DNA of 63,999 nucleotides, counting the filler, from Octopus bimaculoides (lineage: Eukaryota): assembly GCF_001194135.2 (NCBI RefSeq). It is 5 parts of 3 records of this genome, joined end to end, with 100 filler letters (N's around TTAATTAATTAA, not from the genome) between each part and the next. Parts side by side here need not be neighbours in the genome. Positions count along the whole stretch, not along the records: positions 42,151 to 51,824 come from NC_068991.1; 4 more parts are not named here. The stretch is one strand, 5' to 3'. The number at the start of each line of letters is the position of its first letter. Within the stretch, counting starts at the first letter, position 1. This document shows, piece by piece, positions 42,151 through 51,824 of this stretch. The translations under genes and the position numbers were made by a program. The notes beneath the pieces were generated by a model. The model did no database searches and was not told the origin of the DNA. It was given only the letters and a program-made list of their open reading frames with translations.

Positions 42151-43318
42151 TATCACAGAACAAGGGTTTCGCAAGTGGACTGGTAGCAAAAGGATTAAAA
42201 ACGGCATTTTTTAAAAATTTCCTTTTTGTTGGTTGTTTTATCAGGGTAGAAGTGTAAATTCAAATTACTGAACTAAACAGAATTGCAGAATAAATTTACT
42301 TTGCAAAAATTGCAAGGGATAAAAATAAATAAAAAATGGTTGGGAACTCCTGCTCTACAGATTTAGAGAATTATAAAAAAAAAATAATGTTTTGATGTCA
42401 CAGAATGAAGAATTTCAACAGTCAACTCGAAGTTTCACATGGTTCTTAAACTGTACAATAAAAATATGAAACTTTTTCTATTAAAAAAAAAAAAAAAAAT
42501 GTAACATATTGCAATAAACTTATTTATAGCTCTGTTATAATAATAATAATTTTTAAAAATTACAATGAAATAGTACTGGATTTGTCAATTACCATGGCAA
42601 TACTGGGATTCATTTTAACACCAGAAGAAAAATTACAACTTTTTAAGAAAAGTTGGTGATAATCATTAAAAAAAACTGGAATAATATTCAATTATAATTT
42701 TAGGCATTATATGCTCTAATCTAATAATAATTAGGTACTACCACAAGCTTAATTCTATAATCAGGTACCATACACTATAACCTAGAAACTGCTGCTATAA
42801 AATAAAACCAATTTATTGCAAACAGTTCATTCATTTACTTGGTAATGTGTTATGTACCATTTCGTTATTTTATATTTTGATCAACAGGCTTCCAGTTCAA
42901 GTCACTGTCTCATGAGATTTCACTATATAAATTCCAACAAGTTTTACATTCTTATGTAATGGTAGATGTGTAAACCTTGACATAGCAATAAAAACAACAG
43001 TAAGCTATGTTCTGAACAGGGTCAGTAGAGTATAAGAGGCTAAAATTACAATTTAAGAGTAAGATTTATGGAACACTAAACTATCATTTGGATAACATTG
43101 TCTATAAATAGTGATAAATAAATGACAGCAATAGATCATAAAAAAAAAAAAAAAATCAACATGATTCTTAAACTGGGATAGTCAATAACATACTAGCTGA
43201 GGACATTGTGGTAATAAATCTAGCATTTTTATTATTCATGATTAGAAAACAAACAAAAACAAAATTCTTAAAAAAAAATTTTCCTATTGATTGAAAAAAA
43301 AAAAAAAAATGTTCTTAC

Positions 43319-43370
43319 CTCAGTAAACATCACTCCAAACTGACGTTTACATTCCTGATCTCTCAGCACC
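43319..43370 (-). CDS. UBR2: UBR1/2 small internal exon (52 nt, phase 2/0)
   Basis: (G)VLRDQECKRQFGVMFTE vs recalled LLMDLKYKKLFAVRFAK; acceptor tattttctttgaag (AAG), donor gtaag; an in-frame TGA just upstream fixes the 5' boundary. Confidence 0.88.
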
Positions 43371-44168
43371 CTTCAAAGAAAATATACCAAATAACTGTTT
43401 GAGCATTGAACATTCAAGTAGTGGTGATATAAAACACAAAACATCAGTAAATGTACATCATTAACAATATGACACCATGTTCTTAATATTGCAGTCTATC
43501 AACTAATAAAATAGCCACAAAGTTAGTTAAATGATTCATTTATAATGTGATTTGATAGTCAAAAGTTACTGATAACAAGTGTGTATAAACATATATACAC
43601 ACACTGAATTCTAAAATCTGTGCTAAAATTTTAAATGTAAAATATCAGAAAAAATATGAGAATCACTTTGAGACATATACAAATGTGGGTGTTACTTTGG
43701 TATGTGATCTACAAGAGTCAAATTCTACTTTAATATGTGATCTACAAGTTTCATTTATTTATTATGACTTAAATAAAACATTCTTACATTTTTATACATT
43801 TATTTTAAAAAATTAAAATGAAGCAGGTTTGAAACAAGTTTACTAATTTTATGGGTGAATCAAACAAACGGACAAATCAAACAAATGGGCAAATCGAACA
43901 AACATCAGATAGAAAAGTAAAAAGAAGATAATTAAAATTTTTATACATTTATTATTAAAAAGAAATTAGAATGAAGCAAATCTGAAACAAGTTTATTAAT
44001 TTTATCAGTGACTCAAACAAACATCAAGCGTTTTCCTTGTTCTTGCTGAGTATAACTTTTCTCGTAGATCACAATATAAAGTGCAGATCATATACCAAAG
44101 CAGTTTCATGACACGTAGACCACATACCAAAGTAGAACCCATATGTCTGTATGTAAGTATATACCTAC

Positions 44169-44205
44169 CCACTCATCAATAGCTGATGACTTTGTATTCT
44201 GGCAA
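44169..44205 (-). CDS. UBR2: UBR1/2 small internal exon (37 nt, phase 1/2)
   Basis: (I)ARIQSHQLLMS(G) vs recalled UBR2 GARSVYHQLFMSS; strong pyrimidine tract ctttctcttttctag, gtaggt donor; phases fit both neighbouring exons. Confidence 0.9.
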
Positions 44206-44311
44206 CTAGAAAAGAGAAAGAAAATTATTATACATCAATATAACTATTTGGAAGATTCATTCTACATTTACTGTTTCATTGCCTCAATACAAGAAAATAT
44301 GTTTACAATTT

Positions 44312-44352
<41 letters not shown>

Positions 44353-44654
44353 TCTATGCGCTGGTATACAAAGTAAACCTGAAATGGTTTTCCGGTCCTA
44401 TTTTTTTTTTTATTTCATCTATAATTTTACATCTTTAGTTTGCTTCTATATTTGCACAAACTAAGTGGAATGTAAACCTATCTATTATTCAATCTTAGCA
44501 AGGAGTAAAAAAAAAAAAAGGTAAAAGAATTTAAATACAAGTTTTTCTTAAAAATATATCATTTGGGCAGAGAAAATGACACAAAGTGTGGTGAACAAAA
44601 GGACTTAGTTATAGAGTGCCATTAAATGGCAGCAAATATTATGGTAGATCAATA

Positions 44655-44870
44655 AAGCAACGAGCTGGCAGAAACATCAACAAGATGGGTAAAATGTTTA
44701 GTGGCATATCGTCTATCTTGACATTCTGAGTTCAATACTGCAAAAGTCAATTTTACCTTTCGTCCTTCCAAAGTCAACAAAATAAGTACCAGTTGAGTAC
44801 TAGGGTCAATATAATCGACATACACGCACCCCAGAAACTGCTAGCCATGTGCCAAAATTTGAAACCAATA
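44655..44870 (+). mobile_element. SINE family A, old CpG-decayed copy in a UBR intron
   Basis: gagctggcagaaac...ctgagttcaatac...aagtaccagttgag...ccaaaatttgaaacc. Confidence 0.8.
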
Positions 44871-44987
44871 CTATGGTTGATCAATGGACTATTATTTGTG
44901 TTTCCAGTGAAATGGGAGAATAAATAGGAAAAAAATTTTTTATTAAAAGATAACATTACTTTTAACATCATCTTACATACTAGAACA

Positions 44988-45377
44988 GTGGAGGCGCAAT
45001 GGCCCAGTGGTTAGGGCAGCGGACTCGCGGTCATAGGATCGCGGTTTTGATTCCCAGACCGGGCGTTGTGAGTGTTTATTGAACGAAAACACTTAAAGCT
45101 CCACGAGGCTCCGGCAGGGGATGGTGACGAACCCTGCTGCACTCTTCCACCACAACTTTCTCTCACTCTTACTTCCTGTTTCTGTTGTGCCTGTAATTCA
45201 AAGGGTCAGCCTTGTCACACTGTGTCACGCTGAATCTCCCCGAGAACTACGTTAAGGGTACATGTGTCTGTGGAGTGCTCAGCCACTTGCATGTTAATTT
45301 CACGAGCAGGCTGTTCTGTTGATCGGATCAACTGGAACCCTCGACGTTGTAAGCGACAGAGTGCCAACACACAACAC
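44988..45377 (+). mobile_element. Full-length tRNA-derived SINE family C with 13-bp TSD
   Basis: Head ggcgcaatggcccagtggttagggcagcggactc...ttgattccc; TSD acatactagaaca at 44975-44987 and 45378-45390. Confidence 0.92.
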
Positions 45378-45566
45378 ACATACTAGAACATCTATAATAT
45401 AGGTGTATAGTGTGGATTACATATAATGCAAAATATGTGTGTACTGAGCAACCTAATGATCTCAGCTGGAAGCACATTATGATTCCAAGAGGAATAAAAT
45501 TTTAAGAAAAGCTGCAAGGAGGTGTCAACTGTAATAAAGAAAAAGATTACTGATTAATCAACTTAC

Positions 45567-45665
45567 TTTTCCACAGCTTGGTATCAGCCAGAATCAAACG
45601 CTCCATCAGTGAACCACTTTCAGAAGGCTGCATGGCTAACTTACAAAATAAATATCGCAGCCCAT
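45567..45665 (-). CDS. UBR2: UBR1/2 internal exon (99 nt, phase 1/1)
   Basis: (D)GLRYLFCKLAMQPSESGSLMERLILADTKLWK vs recalled UBR2 DGLRRILCQ...SLVDRLMLSDSKLWK; ctgtag acceptor, gtaagt donor. Confidence 0.95.
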
Positions 45666-46129
45666 CTACAGAGAAATAAACAAAAGATAAAAAAATGGTA
45701 CATGACAATAACAATAAAAATTAATTTCTTAAATCAAGAGAGAGACCTTAAGTCTATATTTAAAATTTAAATGTTAAAATTCAAAATAAAGATTCTTTTT
45801 AAATGGACTGGTAGCTTCTGGCACATCGACTACCCTCAATCTTTACTCTTCATTCATTATACCCACCTCCATTCACTCACTGCCCCTCACTCTCCCCATG
45901 CACTCTTGTAACCTCTCTACCCAACCAGACTCACCATTCTTCTGCCCTCACACAACTCATACCTTGAGGATCCATCCTGAAACCTAATCACCCCTATTTT
46001 TATCTCTTTCCAGTTCCATCCCATTTACTCTTATCCTCTCTTCTATAATGTGAGTGCTCAACAGCAAGAAACCTGTTCTGTTATGGCCCCTATTTTCATA
46101 CCTCTTTTCTCTTCTCTCCTACCATAAAG

Positions 46130-46395
46130 CCATTCCCTTTCTATTATAGCTCCACTCAGTCACACAGGATCTCAGTCTTGCAATCTGCAAGGCAACCTCA
46201 CTAGTATTGGTGCTATAAAAAAAAAAGCATCTGGTGCAGTCTGTAAAGTGGCTGGTGTAAGGAAGGGCATCGAGCCACAGAAACCTTGCCAAAACAGACA
46301 ATGAAGCACAATGCAGTCCTCAGATCTGTTGGATCCTGGCAAACAGTTCAACCTATGCTAACATGGAAGCTAGACATAAAAGAAATGATGATAGT
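46130..46395 (+). mobile_element. SINE 3' portion with RTE-type tail (aagggcatc.agcc..agaaac...atgatgat)
   Basis: Characteristic RTE-partner tail motif ending in (GAT)n; CpG-decayed. Confidence 0.6.
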
Positions 46396-46596
46396 GACAG
46401 ATAATAATCTCAACTGTTGCTATGTCTTTTCTTATAACTGACAAAAACCTTGACAAGAAAGTCACAGAACTCAAAAATTATCAAACCCAGACATGATTTA
46501 ACTTCATATTAGTGAAATAATGCTAAATAAATAACAGAAAACATCTACCACATTGACAACAAGAGGATAAATATAACATTGGTGTTTATACCATAC

Positions 46597-46720
46597 CTGA
46601 TTTAGAAATTATATACTGCAACCATTGAATAGCTTTTAGCGCAAACTTCTGATGGGAAACAACAGTTGTATGCATAACCTGAACCTTGAGAGGTTTGGAG
46701 CTTCCTCGTGATGACATTTG
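46597..46720 (-). CDS. UBR2: UBR1/2 internal exon (124 nt, phase 0/1)
   Basis: QMSSRGSSKPLKVQVMHTTVVSHQKFALKAIQWLQYIISKS; the KPLKVQVMH motif is as in UBR2; ttttgtag acceptor, gtatg donor. Confidence 0.95.
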
Positions 46721-46928
46721 CTACAAAAGAAAAGGCCAAAGAAGTCGGTTATTTTAACAAATAATTAAGCTTGTTCTCAATATAAAAAAAAAATTATTTC
46801 TCTATCTTTCGATACATCTCAATGCTTCTGAAACAAACTTTGTTTACTTTCATCGTAAGTTGAATTTAACGTTCGCGTCTTATGAAGCTAAATTTATAAG
46901 TTCTAAAATTGCAGAAGAATTTGTTACT

Positions 46929-47001
46929 GGGCAGTTTAGCTTAATGGTAAAGCACTTGATGCGTAATCACAGGGATGTGAATTCGAGTCTCATGGCTGGC
47001 C
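46929..47001 (+). pseudogene. Decayed tRNA-like sequence (CGT in anticodon loop, Thr-like)
   Basis: D-arm GCTT/AAGC intact, loop TGCGTAA, B-box TTCGAGT; mismatches in anticodon, T and acceptor stems. Confidence 0.55.
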
Positions 47002-47867
47002 GGTAGCGTATTTTTCTGCAATGTATGAATAATTTATCCTGATCACGCTATTTATTAGCATTATCACGCGTTTGAGAATAAAATAAATTTATTTGTGTAT
47101 CTTTCAATACATCGCAACGCTTCTAAAACAAACTTTGTTTACTTTCATCATAATTGTAGTGACGAAAAAATTCCCAAAAATTTGTTGTTGAGCAATTCCT
47201 GGCATACACCGCCAGAGTTTGAAACCTGCCACAGGGAATATAAAGTAAAGTTGGTGATGCCCTTTATTGTACTTGTCTCAGCTTTTGTTTCCTTTCTTTT
47301 AATATTTGGAGTTTACCGGTCTAAAGACTATTTACAGAAGGAACATGGGAGAAGAGGAACTGCTACAGAGTTGTGTGTGTGTGAGAGAGGGAAACAGTGT
47401 CTGATATGCAAAGGTAATACAATGGACCAGTTTGAAAAGTAGCAGAGGCAGTTAACAGGTTTCTGGACAAAGTAACAGGCAGGAAGAATAGGTGGAAGAA
47501 GGCAAAAGGCCATTTTTGTTGGATAAATTAGCTGAAAAGAGTTCAGTGGTTTCAAGGGAAACCAGCTGTGAAATGCCTTTTCCAATGATTTACAGTGAAA
47601 TGTAAAATTGAAGAACACTGCAATACAGGGAGCTGATATAATTAAAATTTGGTTTAGTGAAATAATTCCTTTTGCCTTGGGTACATAACAATTTTATTGA
47701 AGAAATGAAGATACAGTCCATAAAACTGATCCTAGTAACATAATAAAGCTTATGTTAACCTCGGAGAGGTAAAAAACGAAGTAGATAATGCAGACAATCC
47801 CAAACATTTTAAATTCAGAAACAAGAGACATGATATTGAATATTTTAAATCATTTAATTTGGCTCTC

Positions 47868-47993
47868 ACTCTTTACTCTTTTACTCGTTTCAGTCATTTG
47901 ACTGCGGCCATGCTGGAGCACCGCCTTTAGTCGAGCAAATCGACCCCAGGACTTATTCTTTGGAAGCCTAGTACTTATTCTATCGGTCTCTTT
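47868..47993 (-). mobile_element. SINE family B, 3' part (young copy)
   Basis: Reverse complement matches 51725-51824 at about 97 of 100 positions by eye. Confidence 0.9.
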
Positions 47994-48083
47994 ATTTGGC
48001 TCTCTATTTTTTCAACCACCTCCACTGTCCTACTTTATTAAAATAGATTCAATACAATAACTAAAAATAAAATGTATACATAC

Positions 48084-48146
48084 TTCAATATGTTTTCTTG
48101 CTTTATCACAAACGATGAAACCTCCAGTTTTTATACCACTTCTTCC
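48084..48146 (-). CDS. UBR2: UBR1/2 internal exon (63 nt, phase 0/0)
   Basis: GRSGIKTGGFIVCDKARKHIE with tttcag acceptor and gtatgt donor; matches recalled GRRSVRYGDFQYCEQAKSVIV. Confidence 0.9.
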
Positions 48147-49064
48147 CTGAAAGTAGAAATGACAAACAACAAGAGAATAAAACCATTTTTAAAGGCGCAT
48201 TTCAAAGTGGATGATCCAGCTATGAATAAAAGCATGTAATATGTCTGGTTAAAAACCCCTTAAATGGAAAAGAAAGAAAAAACTGAAGACTACCTGTAAG
48301 ATACAAATCTTGCTTCTTCTATACCCATAAAAGGTGTATTTACCAATTATACTAAAATAACCTACAGTACTTCCATCAAATTAAGCGCTTTGATCTGACA
48401 AGCAAGAAAATAGGCCTGAGAAGCTTCGAGAAATATGCAAATAAATCATTTTTTTGATGTGGATACAATCAAAGATAATAGCTTGTAATATATCAAAAGA
48501 ATGATTTAGTTTTGAAGTTTAATATCTCTCAGTTCTTTTGCTCTTCAAAGTCATAAAAAAAAAAACTAAAAGTTAATGAAAATTTATTACTGTTTGGAAA
48601 CAAGACAAATTCCTCATCTGGTGAATATATGTATATAAATAAGAGAATGTGCATTTAACAAAATAGCTTCTATGAGTAAATAAATAATTTACATCATGAA
48701 ACTGCAGCTAAGTTAGAATAAAATGATCTGTTTAAATCTATGCCCTAGATTAAGTGTAGTAGTTCTATACTGCTCAATTGGCTCCACTTTGATTCTTAAT
48801 TCCTGTTTTGATAAAGAAGAACAAGCTTAGTGTTTTATTTAAAAGGACACAATCCTATGCCAACTCATAACTCGTCAAACTTTATTGATACAGTCATTGT
48901 AACTCCTCAGGCCCTCCTTGTAGGATCCACGTGAAACAGCTGGTAGAGGATAAGTATCTACTCGACTGACAGATGTTATGATTAGAAAAGTGTCATGTAG
49001 TTTGATATTAAACACTACACCAAATTCATTCAGAAATATATTACACACAGATTTCTGACATGCA

Positions 49065-49200
49065 CACACAGCTGTTTGGCTGATGTCCACTTTGCAACCA
49101 TGTGGTTTCAGGTTCAATCCCATGGGTCTGCGCCTCAGGCTAGTGTCTTCTACTATCACTTTGAACTGAGCAATGCCTTGTGAGTTTGGTAGACAGAAAC
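49065..49200 (+). mobile_element. SINE family B, degenerate 5' part
   Basis: caaccatgtggtttcaggttcaatccc...gtcttctactat...ccttgtgagtttggtagacagaaac. Confidence 0.7.
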
Positions 49201-49411
49201 AGTATTAAGTCTTCTACAAAAGGGAATGAATGACAAGAAAAATCATCATATCTATGGCAGCCATTTGTGTAAAATCTGAATGTAATAGGCAAAAACCAAA
49301 AATGTATTTGAAATCAGCATTAAAAAAAAAATGGTTCAGAATCACCTGTAAGTGGACAATCATCATTTACTTCATTAAAAAATGCAGGCTTATGTAATTA
49401 AAACAACTTAC

Positions 49412-49489
49412 TTCTCGGTCAACAGTTGTAGAAAAGTCTGCTGCTTGTTTTGCTGAGCAGTCAACTGCTTTTTGAAGTGTATTGATCAC
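49412..49489 (-). CDS. UBR2: UBR1/2 internal exon (78 nt, phase 0/0), N-domain
   Basis: VINTLQKAVDCSAKQAADFSTTVDRE with tgtag acceptor and gtaagt donor; matches recalled UBR2 VIYTLQKAVNCTQKEAIGFATTVDRD. Confidence 0.93.
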
Positions 49490-50267
49490 CTACAGTGGAC
49501 AAGGCAACAAGAGGGAGGACATTAGTAAAACCGTAGACTTTTAGGCCAAAGTTATTAATACAGTTTAATGTTAATCAAAAGATAAATTTGAAGAATTAAT
49601 TACTTTCATAAAAAAAAAACCTAGAAATATTTGAGTTTTGTAATGTTATTAGAACTTTCATTAAGTTATCTGTCAAATACTAGACAGTAGTCAAGTATAT
49701 ATGTTACCCTAACAAGGTCTCTCATGTTAAATCTACCATATGGAAGTGTATACACAAGTATATTTTAATCCTACTATATTCCTTTATTGATCTTTCCATG
49801 AGAGAGCTTATGAGTGTACTGTCGAGACAACCTTGAAGCTCCTCTTTAATTAATCCAGGTTTCAGCTTCTTAGAGAGAACCGCCCTCTGCACATATCCTG
49901 AAGAAGGCCAACCTTGTTGATACTGAAATACTCCATTGCCAGATGTTCTGAAGCTTGTTACAGACACTCTAGTACACTTGTAACACTGTACACTGTAGTG
50001 TTGTAACTATACATACTGTATTATTTTAATATCATATGAGGGCAGCAAATTGGCAGAATTGTTACCATGCCAAAATAAATGCTTAGTGATCTTACGTTTA
50101 AGTTCAAATGCTGCCGAGACTGATGTAATTGGTTTAACCCCTCCCCCACAATGGTTGGTCTTGCAATTTGAAATTAATATCATATGCTCTGGATCTGTAA
50201 TGCATACTGCCGTGGGTGTTAAGATATTAAAGACATAACCAAATTTCCAGTATTTTGAGCTACTTAA

Positions 50268-50486
50268 CCTTTTTGTTACCATATTTCTGTTGAGATGGTC
50301 TGTGTTTCTTTCAATTAATTTTAAATATAAAGAATTTAGTAAAATAACTTAGTTATCATTAAGCTAGTATTAGGAACATCAATTGTGACTAAGGTTTGGT
50401 GGAAGATTTTAATTCAGAACTTTTGAGACCAAGACATTTGTACTACAGAGCCAGAGGTAGTTTCAGTTGGGTTAGTATCAAAAGAG
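50268..50486. mobile_element. piggyBac-type MITE (about 219 bp) with TTAA TSD
   Basis: TTAA|cctttttgttacc ... ggttagtatcaaaagag|TTAA imperfect TIRs. Confidence 0.7.
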
Positions 50487-50582
50487 TTAAAGCATATCAA
50501 TTGTCCCAAATTAATAGCTGTAATTTTCTTCATTAGGATAACTACTCACTTTATCAGTTCATGGGAAAAACTGCACACTTAC

Positions 50583-50777
50583 TTGGTCGAATGTGTGCAA
50601 CTCATCATTAAAGAGAATGGTGACAAATAAATCATCTGGCTCGCCATCAGGTCTGAGATCAAAGGGTAGACTGTCGTAGGTCTCCCAAGTCATCATATCT
50701 ATAGAATACTGTAGCACAGAAATGAAGAGATCGCTGGCACGGGCTATTAGTTCATCAGGAAGAGAAGCAAGCCGATC
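50583..50777 (-). CDS. UBR2: UBR1/UBR2-family N-recognin E3 ubiquitin ligase, internal exon (195 nt, phase 0/0)
   Basis: Manual translation DRLASLPDELIARASDLFISVLQYSIDMMTWETYDSLPFDLRPDGEPDDLFVTILFNDELHTFDQ. Flanked by acceptor ctgttctag and donor gtaagt. LFNDExHTxxQ is the start of the ClpS-like N-domain of UBR1/2. Invertebrates have one UBR1/2 orthologue, so the symbol is approximate. Confidence 0.93.
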
Positions 50778-51457
50778 CTAGAACAGAAGGGAAGTTAAAA
50801 AAATTTTTTAAATTACTTCAATGCTTTCAACAAAGTTACAGCAACAAATACAGCCAAATAGAGAGTATATGTGGTAGCTAAAATCTATCAGAAATAGGAG
50901 GTTGAACAATCAGCTTTAAAAAAGGAAAGACAGAATGGATAATGTACTTCTAGATGTGTTATGACTGAAATTAAGACAAAGGCTGCCAGTTGCAGGCAGT
51001 CCTATGGCTAAACAATGATGATGACAATGTCTCAATTAGACTGCTAATTACACTAATTTATCTAGTATAATACATGCAATGATAAAAGAGGTGAATATGT
51101 AACCTTATAACTCCAGAATCCATTTAATCGTTTGTGAGGCAGGATCAAACTGCTGGACTTGTCTAATCTATGTCAGTGAGGNNNNNNNNNNNNNNNNNNN
51201 NNNNNNNNNNNNNNNNNNNNNNNNNNNNNNNNNNNNNNNNNNNNNNNNNNNNNNNNNNNNNNNNNNNNNNNNNNNNNNNNATAACAATGATGAATAACAT
51301 GTTGTATTTGCAAAATGCAAGTGTGGCTAAGATATTCATCTATGAATCTGAAGACCATAAGTTCAAATCCACTGCAATCCTTTCATTCTGTTTCTACACA
51401 GAATGCCCCCCACCCCAGGTTACTTAACTGTAACAAATAATTTTCTGAAGAAGTTAT

Positions 51458-51824
51458 AGGCGCAGGAGTGGCTGTGTGGTAAGTAGCTTGCTTACCAACC
51501 ACATGGTTCCGGGTTCAGTCCCACTGTTTGGCATCTTGGGCAAGAGTCTTCTACTATAGCCTCGGGCCAACCAAAGCCTTGTGAGTGGATTTGGTAGACG
51601 GAAACTGAAAGAAGCCCGTTGTATATATGTATCTATATGTTTGTGTGTCCGTGTTTGTCCCCCCAGCTTCACTTGATGACTGATGCTGGTGTGTTTAAGT
51701 CCCCCGTAACTTAGTGGCTCAGCAAAAGAGACCGATAGAATGAGTACTAGGCTTACAAAGAATAAGTCCTGGGGTCGATTTGTTCGACTAAAGGCGGTGC
51801 TCCAGCATGGCCGCAGTCAAATGA
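51458..51824 (+). mobile_element. Near full-length tRNA-derived SINE family B
   Basis: A-box tggctgtgtggt, B-box ggttcagtccc, body and 3' part shared with other copies; cut by the spacer. Confidence 0.92.

What the first reader, a model, noticed from the sequence alone, without database searches (positions are those of the whole stretch)
47868..51824. Inverted near-identical SINEs bracket a 336-nt, phase-0, stop-free block of UBR exons encoding the ClpS-like N-domain
Seen: family B SINE 3' parts at 47868-47993 (-) and about 51725-51824 (+) are reverse complements at about 97% over 100 nt. The first starts only about 90 nt downstream of the donor at 48084. Between them lie exons of 195+78+63 = 336 nt, all phase 0/0 with no stop. 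Known: reverse-complementary intronic repeats promote back-splicing and ADAR editing; coleoids edit RNA heavily; the UBR1/2 N-domain binds type-2 (bulky hydrophobic) N-degrons. Inference: the pre-mRNA could form a duplex that yields (a) a 336-nt circRNA with an endless 112-codon frame and (b) an in-frame linear isoform lacking the N-domain. A SINE insertion would thus act as a switch on N-degron specificity.
Basis: partly seen in the sequence, partly recalled or inferred. Interest (0 to 1): 0.7.

Follow-up and report, generated by a model that had tools for sequence, protein, structure and literature searches.

The report
Inverted SINE copies flanking UBR exons
Two young copies of a short mobile element sit in opposite orientation in introns on either side of three exons of a UBR1/2-type ubiquitin ligase gene; they could pair in the pre-mRNA, but this arrangement is ordinary in a repeat-rich genome and no function is shown.

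Summary
The sequence observation holds. On the minus strand lie three canonical AG/GT exons of 195, 78 and 63 nt, all phase 0/0 and stop-free, from a UBR1/2-type gene. A 100-nt, 97% inverted repeat flanks them (47894-47993 and 51725-51824). The left copy is a 126-nt 5'-truncated retroposon insertion with a perfect 11-bp target-site duplication, 91 nt past the donor. The right copy is a longer element cut off by the piece's edge. The two arms are predicted to pair (-186 kcal/mol).

Three corrections apply:
- The block holds Pfam ClpS positions 2-65 of 80; the rest of the domain is in the next exon.
- The 3n, phase-0 exon architecture is ancestral. An annelid UBR2 gene has the same 192+78+63 structure, so it has nothing to do with the SINEs.
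- The assembly gap lies in the intron between the acceptor and the right arm. I could not verify that join.

Circular RNA, exon skipping and editing cannot be tested here. If this is an octopus, the published priors are low: tens of thousands of such inverted pairs, only 296 confident circRNAs, and ADAR unwinding of such duplexes. The most likely reading is two neutral intronic insertions forming an ADAR substrate. It is an ordinary case with low interest.

The parts
47857..47867 (.). Target-site duplication, copy 1 (ATTTGGCTCTC)
   Evidence: Exact 11-nt match to 47994-48004, lying directly against the insertion boundaries.
47868..47993 (-). 5'-truncated SINE-type retroposon copy of 126 nt (3' part with a GAGTAAA-like tail). 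It lies in the intron downstream of the 63-nt exon, in sense orientation in the pre-mRNA. Positions 47894-47993 form the downstream duplex arm.
   Evidence: 97% reverse-complement match to 51725-51824. Flanked by the TSD. Starts 91 nt from the donor.
47994..48004 (.). Target-site duplication, copy 2
48084..48146 (-). UBR1/2 exon, 63 nt, phase 0/0 (GRSGIKTGGFIVCDKARKHIE)
   Evidence: Acceptor ag| and donor |gtatgt. tblastn to Lamellibrachia UBR2 residues 226-247. Same 63-nt exon in L001.
49095..49200 (+). Old, diverged fragment related to the 5' half of the right-hand element (72% to 51496-51605). It lies in the intron between the 78-nt and 63-nt exons. It has the same orientation as the right copy, so it is not a pairing partner.
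   Evidence: (D2).
49412..49489 (-). UBR1/2 exon, 78 nt, phase 0/0 (VINTLQKAVDCSAKQAADFSTTVDRE)
   Evidence: Same 78-nt exon in L001.
50583..50777 (-). UBR1/2 exon, 195 nt, phase 0/0 (DRLASLPDEL...LFNDELHTFDQ). It encodes a linker plus the start of the ClpS-like domain.
   Evidence: The orthologous 192-nt exon in L001 has the same boundaries.
51182..51280 (.). Assembly gap (99 N) inside the upstream intron, between the acceptor and the right arm
   Evidence: No UBR-like coding on either side. Continuity not testable.
51458..51824 (+). Longer SINE-type element (at least 367 nt, cut by the piece's edge), antisense in the pre-mRNA. Positions 51725-51824 form the upstream duplex arm. The head carries A-box-like TGGCTGTGTGG (51469) and B-box-like GGTTCAGTCCC (51512).
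   Evidence: Rfam and ARAGORN do not call the head a tRNA.
46597..46720 (-). Next UBR1/2 exon (124 nt, starts in phase 0). It encodes the end of the ClpS-like domain (PLKVQVMH...) and would be the acceptor exon of the proposed skip.

Best explanation
Two independent, recent retroposon (SINE-type) insertions landed in opposite orientation in two different introns of a UBR1/2-type N-recognin gene on the minus strand. Between them lie three old, constitutive-looking phase-0 exons that encode the linker and most of the ClpS-like N-domain.

Shown: the insertions, the TSD of the left copy, the exon structure, the family of the gene, and the predicted pairing of the arms.

Inferred: in the pre-mRNA the arms form a near-perfect dsRNA of about 100-126 bp. 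Its most likely fate is ADAR hyper-editing and unwinding, with normal linear splicing. Back-splicing into a 336-nt circle, or three-exon skipping, would be at most a minor by-product and not a regulatory switch. The locus is one ordinary instance of a very common configuration in a SINE-rich genome.
For: - The repeat and its boundaries are established. The 11-bp TSD proves that the left copy is a separate insertion event.
- The gene is a UBR1/2 type: human UBR2 (9wbv) E=3.7e-56 over residues 178-393, UBR1 E=1.4e-41, and Pfam ClpS at 64 bits.
- The exon lengths and phases are shared with an annelid UBR2 gene, so they predate the insertions.
- Pairing is predicted.
- Priors, if the organism is an octopus:
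  - SINEs make up 11.6% of the O. vulgaris genome (PMC13282606).
  - 0.44% of random 50-bp loci in O. bimaculoides have a partner that is >95% identical and inverted within 2 kb, and such duplexes are hyper-edited and unwound (PMC5625713). With a 2.7-Gb genome (my own figure) this gives roughly 20,000-60,000 pairs, or about one per 50-100 kb gene.
  - Only 296 confident circRNAs and 33 'skip 3 exons' events were found across 18 tissues (PMC9699675).
  - Not all repeats support circularisation, and stronger hairpins can inhibit it (PMC4201285).
Against: - Inverted repeats of only 30-40 nt can suffice for circularisation in human cells (PMC4201285).
- The downstream arm is very close to the donor (91 nt).
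- No competing within-intron partner is visible for either arm in the piece.
- The duplex is very stable, so some back-splicing is mechanistically plausible.
- No RNA data could be examined, so absence of function is a prior, not a result.
- The octopus priors rest on a species attribution that no tool confirmed.
Confidence: 0.7

Rival explanations
1. The duplex does drive detectable back-splicing, and possibly the reciprocal three-exon skip, but only as low-level splicing noise without function.
For: All structural preconditions are met: complementary arms of at least 100 nt in the two flanking introns, canonical splice sites and a short distance to the donor. Short repeats are sufficient in model genes (PMC4201285). 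A paper in the library argues that most mammalian circRNAs are splicing errors (PMC8365531, listed; I did not read it in full).
Against: Octopus circRNAs are few and low, and ADAR antagonises such duplexes (PMC9699675; PMC5625713). The held supplementary files of PMC9699675 contain no mention of UBR1 or UBR2, although they may not include the circRNA list.
Confidence: 0.2
2. One reading: the SINE pair acts as a switch. It would produce a 336-nt circRNA with an endless 112-codon frame and an in-frame linear isoform without the N-domain, changing type-2 N-degron recognition.
For: The frame arithmetic is correct. The circle has no stop in frame 0 and has in-frame ATGs at codons 28 and 29. The skip would be in frame, because the block starts and ends in phase 0 and the next exon starts in phase 0. 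The arms are predicted to pair.
Against: - The phase-0 and 3n property is ancestral and not linked to the SINEs.
- The block lacks the last part of the ClpS-like domain, so neither product equals a clean domain gain or loss.
- There is no sign of regulation, and no evidence of an IRES or translation.
- Priors for circRNA and three-exon skipping are low.
- The insertions are young (3% apart), so any such function would be lineage-specific and unselected so far.
Confidence: 0.04
3. Assembly artefact. The sequence to the right of the gap (51281 onward) is a separate contig that was misplaced or misoriented by scaffolding, or the gap hides the preceding UBR exon. In that case the two copies are not inverted within the introns that flank this block.
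For: A 99-N gap of estimated length lies between the acceptor and the right arm. Both gap edges lie in repeat-like sequence, and young repeats are typical break points for assemblers (my inference).
Against: No UBR-box-like coding is visible in 50778-51181 or 51281-51824, although the expected upstream exon ([9 protein letters not shown].EAWK motif in Lamellibrachia) is highly conserved. Nothing positive points to a misjoin.
Confidence: 0.06

Closest known systems
Inverted-Alu-flanked circRNA loci in mammals (e.g. ZKSCAN1, HIPK3; Liang & Wilusz 2014, PMC4201285)
   Same: SINE copies in opposite orientation sit in the introns on both sides of internal exons with canonical splice sites. Base-pairing would bring the downstream donor and the upstream acceptor together.
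   Different: No back-splice product is shown here. The upstream intron is incomplete and contains an assembly gap. The host, if coleoid, has very high ADAR activity and few circRNAs (PMC9699675). The element is a different, unrelated SINE family, and one copy is only a 126-nt 3' fragment.
Hyper-edited intronic dsRNA formed by neighbouring inverted repeats (Porath et al. 2017, PMC5625713)
   Same: A long, nearly perfect intramolecular duplex made by two young copies of one repeat in one pre-mRNA. This is the substrate class reported as most abundant in octopus.
   Different: The arms are 3.7 kb apart, outside the 2-kb window used in that survey. Editing was not examined here.
Human circ-UBR1 (PMC8809928)
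   Same: A circular RNA reported from a gene of the same family.
   Different: Human cancer-cell work. The paper's text gives no exon composition, and there is no evidence that the same exons or repeat-driven biogenesis are involved.
UBR1/UBR2 N-recognins (PDB 9wbw, 9wbv)
   Same: Collinear match of the seven exons in the piece to UBR2 residues 178-393, including the ClpS-like domain.
   Different: Only part of the gene is in the piece. The UBR box and the rest of the protein were not seen.

Membership tests
UBR1/UBR2-type N-recognin gene | ClpS-like N-domain (Pfam PF02617) | tested here: met
   64.2 bits against a cutoff of 23, E=9.9e-18, residues 47-125 of the spliced peptide.
UBR1/UBR2-type N-recognin gene | Collinear similarity to UBR1/2 beyond the N-domain | tested here: met
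   Human UBR2 residues 178-393 at E=3.7e-56; UBR1 residues 182-392 at E=1.4e-41.
UBR1/UBR2-type N-recognin gene | UBR box zinc finger upstream of the N-domain | not testable with these tools
   The upstream exon lies beyond the piece's edge or in the gap. There is no UBR-box match in 50778-51824.
SINE (LINE-dependent short retroposon) | Insertion flanked by a target-site duplication | tested here: met
   The left copy has an exact 11-bp TSD, ATTTGGCTCTC. The right copy cannot be tested because its 3' end lies off the piece.
SINE (LINE-dependent short retroposon) | Internal pol III promoter or tRNA-derived head | tested here: inconclusive
   An A-box-like motif with 1 mismatch and a B-box-like motif with 2 mismatches lie 43 nt apart, start to start. 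There is no Rfam tRNA hit at E<=10 and no ARAGORN call.
SINE (LINE-dependent short retroposon) | Dispersed multi-copy family | tested here: inconclusive
   There are two young copies and one old fragment in 9.7 kb. Genome-wide copy number could not be measured. The 126-nt left copy could equally be the shared 3' tail of the partner LINE.
Repeat-driven exonic circRNA locus | Reverse-complementary sequences of at least 30-40 nt in both flanking introns | tested here: met
   100 nt at 97%, -186 kcal/mol. This depends on the scaffold join across the gap being correct.
Repeat-driven exonic circRNA locus | Cross-intron pairing not out-competed by within-intron pairs | tested here: inconclusive
   No within-intron partner is visible in the piece, and the MFE fold pairs the arms to each other. 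The upstream intron continues beyond 51824.
Repeat-driven exonic circRNA locus | Observed back-splice junction | not testable with these tools
   No RNA-seq access. The protein and contig collections hold nothing from this organism.
ADAR hyper-editing substrate | Long near-perfect intramolecular dsRNA | tested here: met
   Predicted only: 96-97 bp with 3 mismatches, and 21 and 32 adenosines in the two arms.
ADAR hyper-editing substrate | Clustered A-to-G mismatches in transcripts | not testable with these tools
   No RNA data.

The most novel reading that the evidence does not exclude
The young inverted SINE pair really does drive back-splicing of the three phase-0 exons into a 336-nt circle with an unbroken frame. 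That circle is translated (ATG at codon 28 or 29) into a ClpS-like polypeptide lacking the domain's last strand, or into concatemers of it, while the reciprocal skip makes a UBR ligase blind to type-2 N-degrons. This would be a lineage-specific rewiring of the N-degron pathway created by a retroposon, and it would be tunable by ADAR activity.
Probability: 0.03. Interest if true: 0.55.

Novelty: new member of a known kind. Interest (0 to 1): 0.15.

Why it matters
If the circle or the skip were real and regulated, it would be a clean natural example of a retroposon insertion changing the substrate range of an N-recognin. It would also be a test case for the antagonism between ADAR and circRNA biogenesis in a heavily editing animal.

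As the evidence stands, the locus is mainly useful in two ways. It is a well-delimited candidate: exact junction sequences and an empty-site sequence are given for testing. It is also a caution: the 'cassette-like' exon arithmetic is inherited from the ancestral gene and is not a signature of the insertions.

Tried and rejected
- Independent copies of the locus, to close the gap or find transcripts:
  - Exact-protein look-ups of two window ORFs found nothing.
  - The protein database returned only an annelid and one unnamed Logan hit for the spliced peptide, and nothing for an ORF inside the right-hand element.
  - A metagenome scan for a 26-mer of the element found nothing.
- A tRNA origin for the element head is not supported by Rfam or ARAGORN. 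Only weak, chance-level snoRNA, miRNA and lncRNA hits appear.
- A search of papers for the element's sequence strings gave no hits, so the coleoid attribution stays untested.
- I looked for the preceding UBR exon between 50778 and 51824 with two UBR homologues at E up to 50. Only noise was found.
- I rejected reading the extra long-range helices next to the splice sites in the MFE fold (50779-50804 with 48006-48032) as meaningful. They are extensions that form once the 96-bp helix closes.
Full report
**What is there.** The piece (42151-51824) carries part of a gene on the minus strand. I read seven exons with canonical AG/GT borders:

| Exon (window coordinates) | Length (nt) |
|---|---|
| 50583-50777 | 195 |
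| 49412-49489 | 78 |
| 48084-48146 | 63 |
| 46597-46720 | 124 |
| 45567-45665 | 99 |
| 44169-44205 | 37 |
| 43319-43371 | 53 |

The spliced 217-aa peptide matches human UBR2 residues 178-393 (PDB 9wbv, E=3.7e-56) and UBR1 (9wbw, E=1.4e-41) collinearly. It also matches Pfam ClpS PF02617 at 64 bits. tblastn with an annelid UBR2 fragment (P0001, Lamellibrachia satsuma) finds each of the first six exons. The gene is a UBR1/2-type N-recognin.

**The observation.** The first three exons are 195+78+63 = 336 nt, each phase 0/0, and translate to 112 residues without a stop. Read as a circle, frame 0 stays open across the HIE|DRL junction and has ATG at codons 28 and 29. The other two frames are full of stops.

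The inverted repeat is real: 47894-47993 against 51725-51824, 100 nt, 97%, with three differences. The left copy is a discrete 126-nt insertion (47868-47993) in minus orientation. It corresponds to the last 100 nt visible of the right copy plus 26 nt of a GAGTAAA-like tail. An exact 11-bp target-site duplication, ATTTGGCTCTC, flanks it. It is therefore a 5'-truncated retroposition event of its own, not part of a segmental inversion.

The right copy starts near 51458, with A- and B-box-like motifs, and runs to the piece's edge. It probably continues, so the duplex could reach about 126 bp. The arm lies 91 nt downstream of the donor at 48084. The other arm is nominally 948 nt upstream of the acceptor at 50777, 99 of which are gap N.

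**The gap.** The gap at 51182-51280 lies in the upstream intron, between the acceptor and the right arm. No exon, frame or arm crosses it, so frame continuity is not at issue. What matters is whether the join is right in order, orientation and length, and whether the preceding exon hides in it.

In Lamellibrachia the preceding exon encodes the conserved end of the UBR box ([29 protein letters not shown]...) and ends in phase 0. Nothing like it is visible in 50778-51181 or 51281-51824. I could not obtain any independent copy of the locus. The join therefore remains unverified. I give a misjoin or a hidden exon about 6%.

- The block is not the whole N-domain. Pfam ClpS positions 2-65 of 80 lie in the block. 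Positions 66-79 (…SSKPLKVQVMH…) lie in the next exon, 46597-46720. The first 46 residues of the block are linker. From my own knowledge of ClpS, the block includes the NDE.HT pocket motif but not the last strand.
- The cassette arithmetic is ancestral. The Lamellibrachia gene (L001) has exons of 192, 78 and 63 nt at the same positions and phases, followed by an exon starting in phase 0. The stop-free, 3n, phase-0 property predates the insertions by hundreds of millions of years, so it is not evidence of design around them.

**Would the arms pair?** In the pre-mRNA the upstream arm is antisense and the downstream arm is sense. RNAduplex and cofold give -186.3 kcal/mol, against -22.8 and -26.2 for the arms alone. 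The MFE fold of the 5.3-kb pre-mRNA segment pairs 96 of 100 arm positions with each other. No competing partner for either arm is visible in the piece. The only other related fragment (49095-49200, 72%) covers a different part of the element and has the same orientation as the right copy.

**Is it more than chance?** Against random sequence, yes (E=4e-43). As a configuration, no, provided this is an octopus. No tool confirmed the species.

- SINEs make up 11.6% of the O. vulgaris genome (PMC13282606).
- In O. bimaculoides, 0.44% of random 50-bp loci have a partner that is >95% identical and reverse-oriented within 2 kb. This is the highest value among 19 species (PMC5625713).
- With a genome of about 2.7 Gb (my own figure), this means about 20,000-60,000 such pairs and 220-440 nt of arms per 50-100 kb of gene. 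That is roughly one pair per gene of this size.
- With about 1 kb per exon here (7 exons in 7.5 kb), a pair a few kb apart almost always brackets exons.

**What it most likely does.** The same literature says that such duplexes are extensively hyper-edited and unwound (PMC5625713). Octopus circRNAs are few and low: 296 high-confidence in 18 tissues, 200 of them in a single tissue. The authors link this to ADAR melting intronic dsRNA (PMC9699675). 'Skip 3 exons' events number 33 in their annotation.

Liang and Wilusz show that 30-40 nt repeats can suffice for circularisation. They also show that not all repeats work and that stronger hairpins can inhibit it (PMC4201285).

My best reading (0.7) is two neutral intronic insertions that form an ADAR substrate, with normal linear splicing. 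A low-level, functionless circle or skip is plausible (0.2).

**Age (inference).** The copies differ by 3%. Using the calibration quoted in PMC13282606 (JC 0.065 at about 18 My, 0.09 at about 25 My), and splitting the distance between the two copies, gives a few million years. That is younger than the O. vulgaris / O. bimaculoides split quoted there (13-33 My). Differences between source copies could distort this estimate.

**Comparison with known systems.** The locus looks like an Alu-flanked circRNA locus and like the hyper-edited inverted-repeat substrates described for octopus. It meets the sequence-level criteria of both. The defining RNA-level criteria (back-splice reads, A-to-G clusters) cannot be tested here. 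A human circ-UBR1 is reported (PMC8809928), but the text gives no exon composition.

**Verdict.** This is a new member of a known kind. It is a correct observation and a reasonable but unsupported hypothesis, and it is of low interest unless RNA data show otherwise.

Noticed in passing
L001 19016-19560 (Lamellibrachia satsuma UBR2 locus): The intron after the 78-nt exon holds several tandem pseudo-copies of that exon's 3' end together with its donor (LDFATTVDRE|gtgagc). They lie at about 19125, 19416, 19474 and 19532, forming a small array of decoy exon ends.
   Followed up: no
window 46785-47153: A tRNA-like sequence at 46930-47001 (+) scores 27.2 bits against Rfam tRNA, just under the 29-bit gathering score. 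It sits between two 74-nt direct repeats, 46785-46858 and 47080-47153, that are 88% identical (D3). It may be another SINE head inside a local duplication.
   Followed up: partly
window 44975-45380: A GC-rich element of about 400 nt with a tRNA-like start (GGAGGCGCAATGGCCCAGTGGTTAGGG...) stands out from the AT-rich intron. By eye it is a different SINE family. Rfam does not call it.
   Followed up: partly
window 43673-43746 and 44082-44154: A 75-nt inverted repeat, 75% identical, lies within a single intron between exons 44169-44205 and 43319-43371. Next to it is a direct repeat, 43788-43869 and 43937-44022, at 86%. Within-intron pairs like this favour linear splicing.
   Followed up: no
window 44316-44350: An uninterrupted run of about 35 A lies in an intron. 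It is possibly the tail of an older retroposon.
   Followed up: no
window 47868-47893 (minus-strand sense): The tail of the left element, read in gene sense (GAGTAAAAGAGTAAAGAGTGAGAG), contains several donor-like GTAAA and GTGAG motifs about 200 nt downstream of the real donor. They are potential decoy 5' splice sites. I noted this by eye only.
   Followed up: no
protein and contig collections: Searches returned no close relative of this gene or of the element's ORF. The source organism and its near relatives seem to be absent from the searchable collections.
   Followed up: yes
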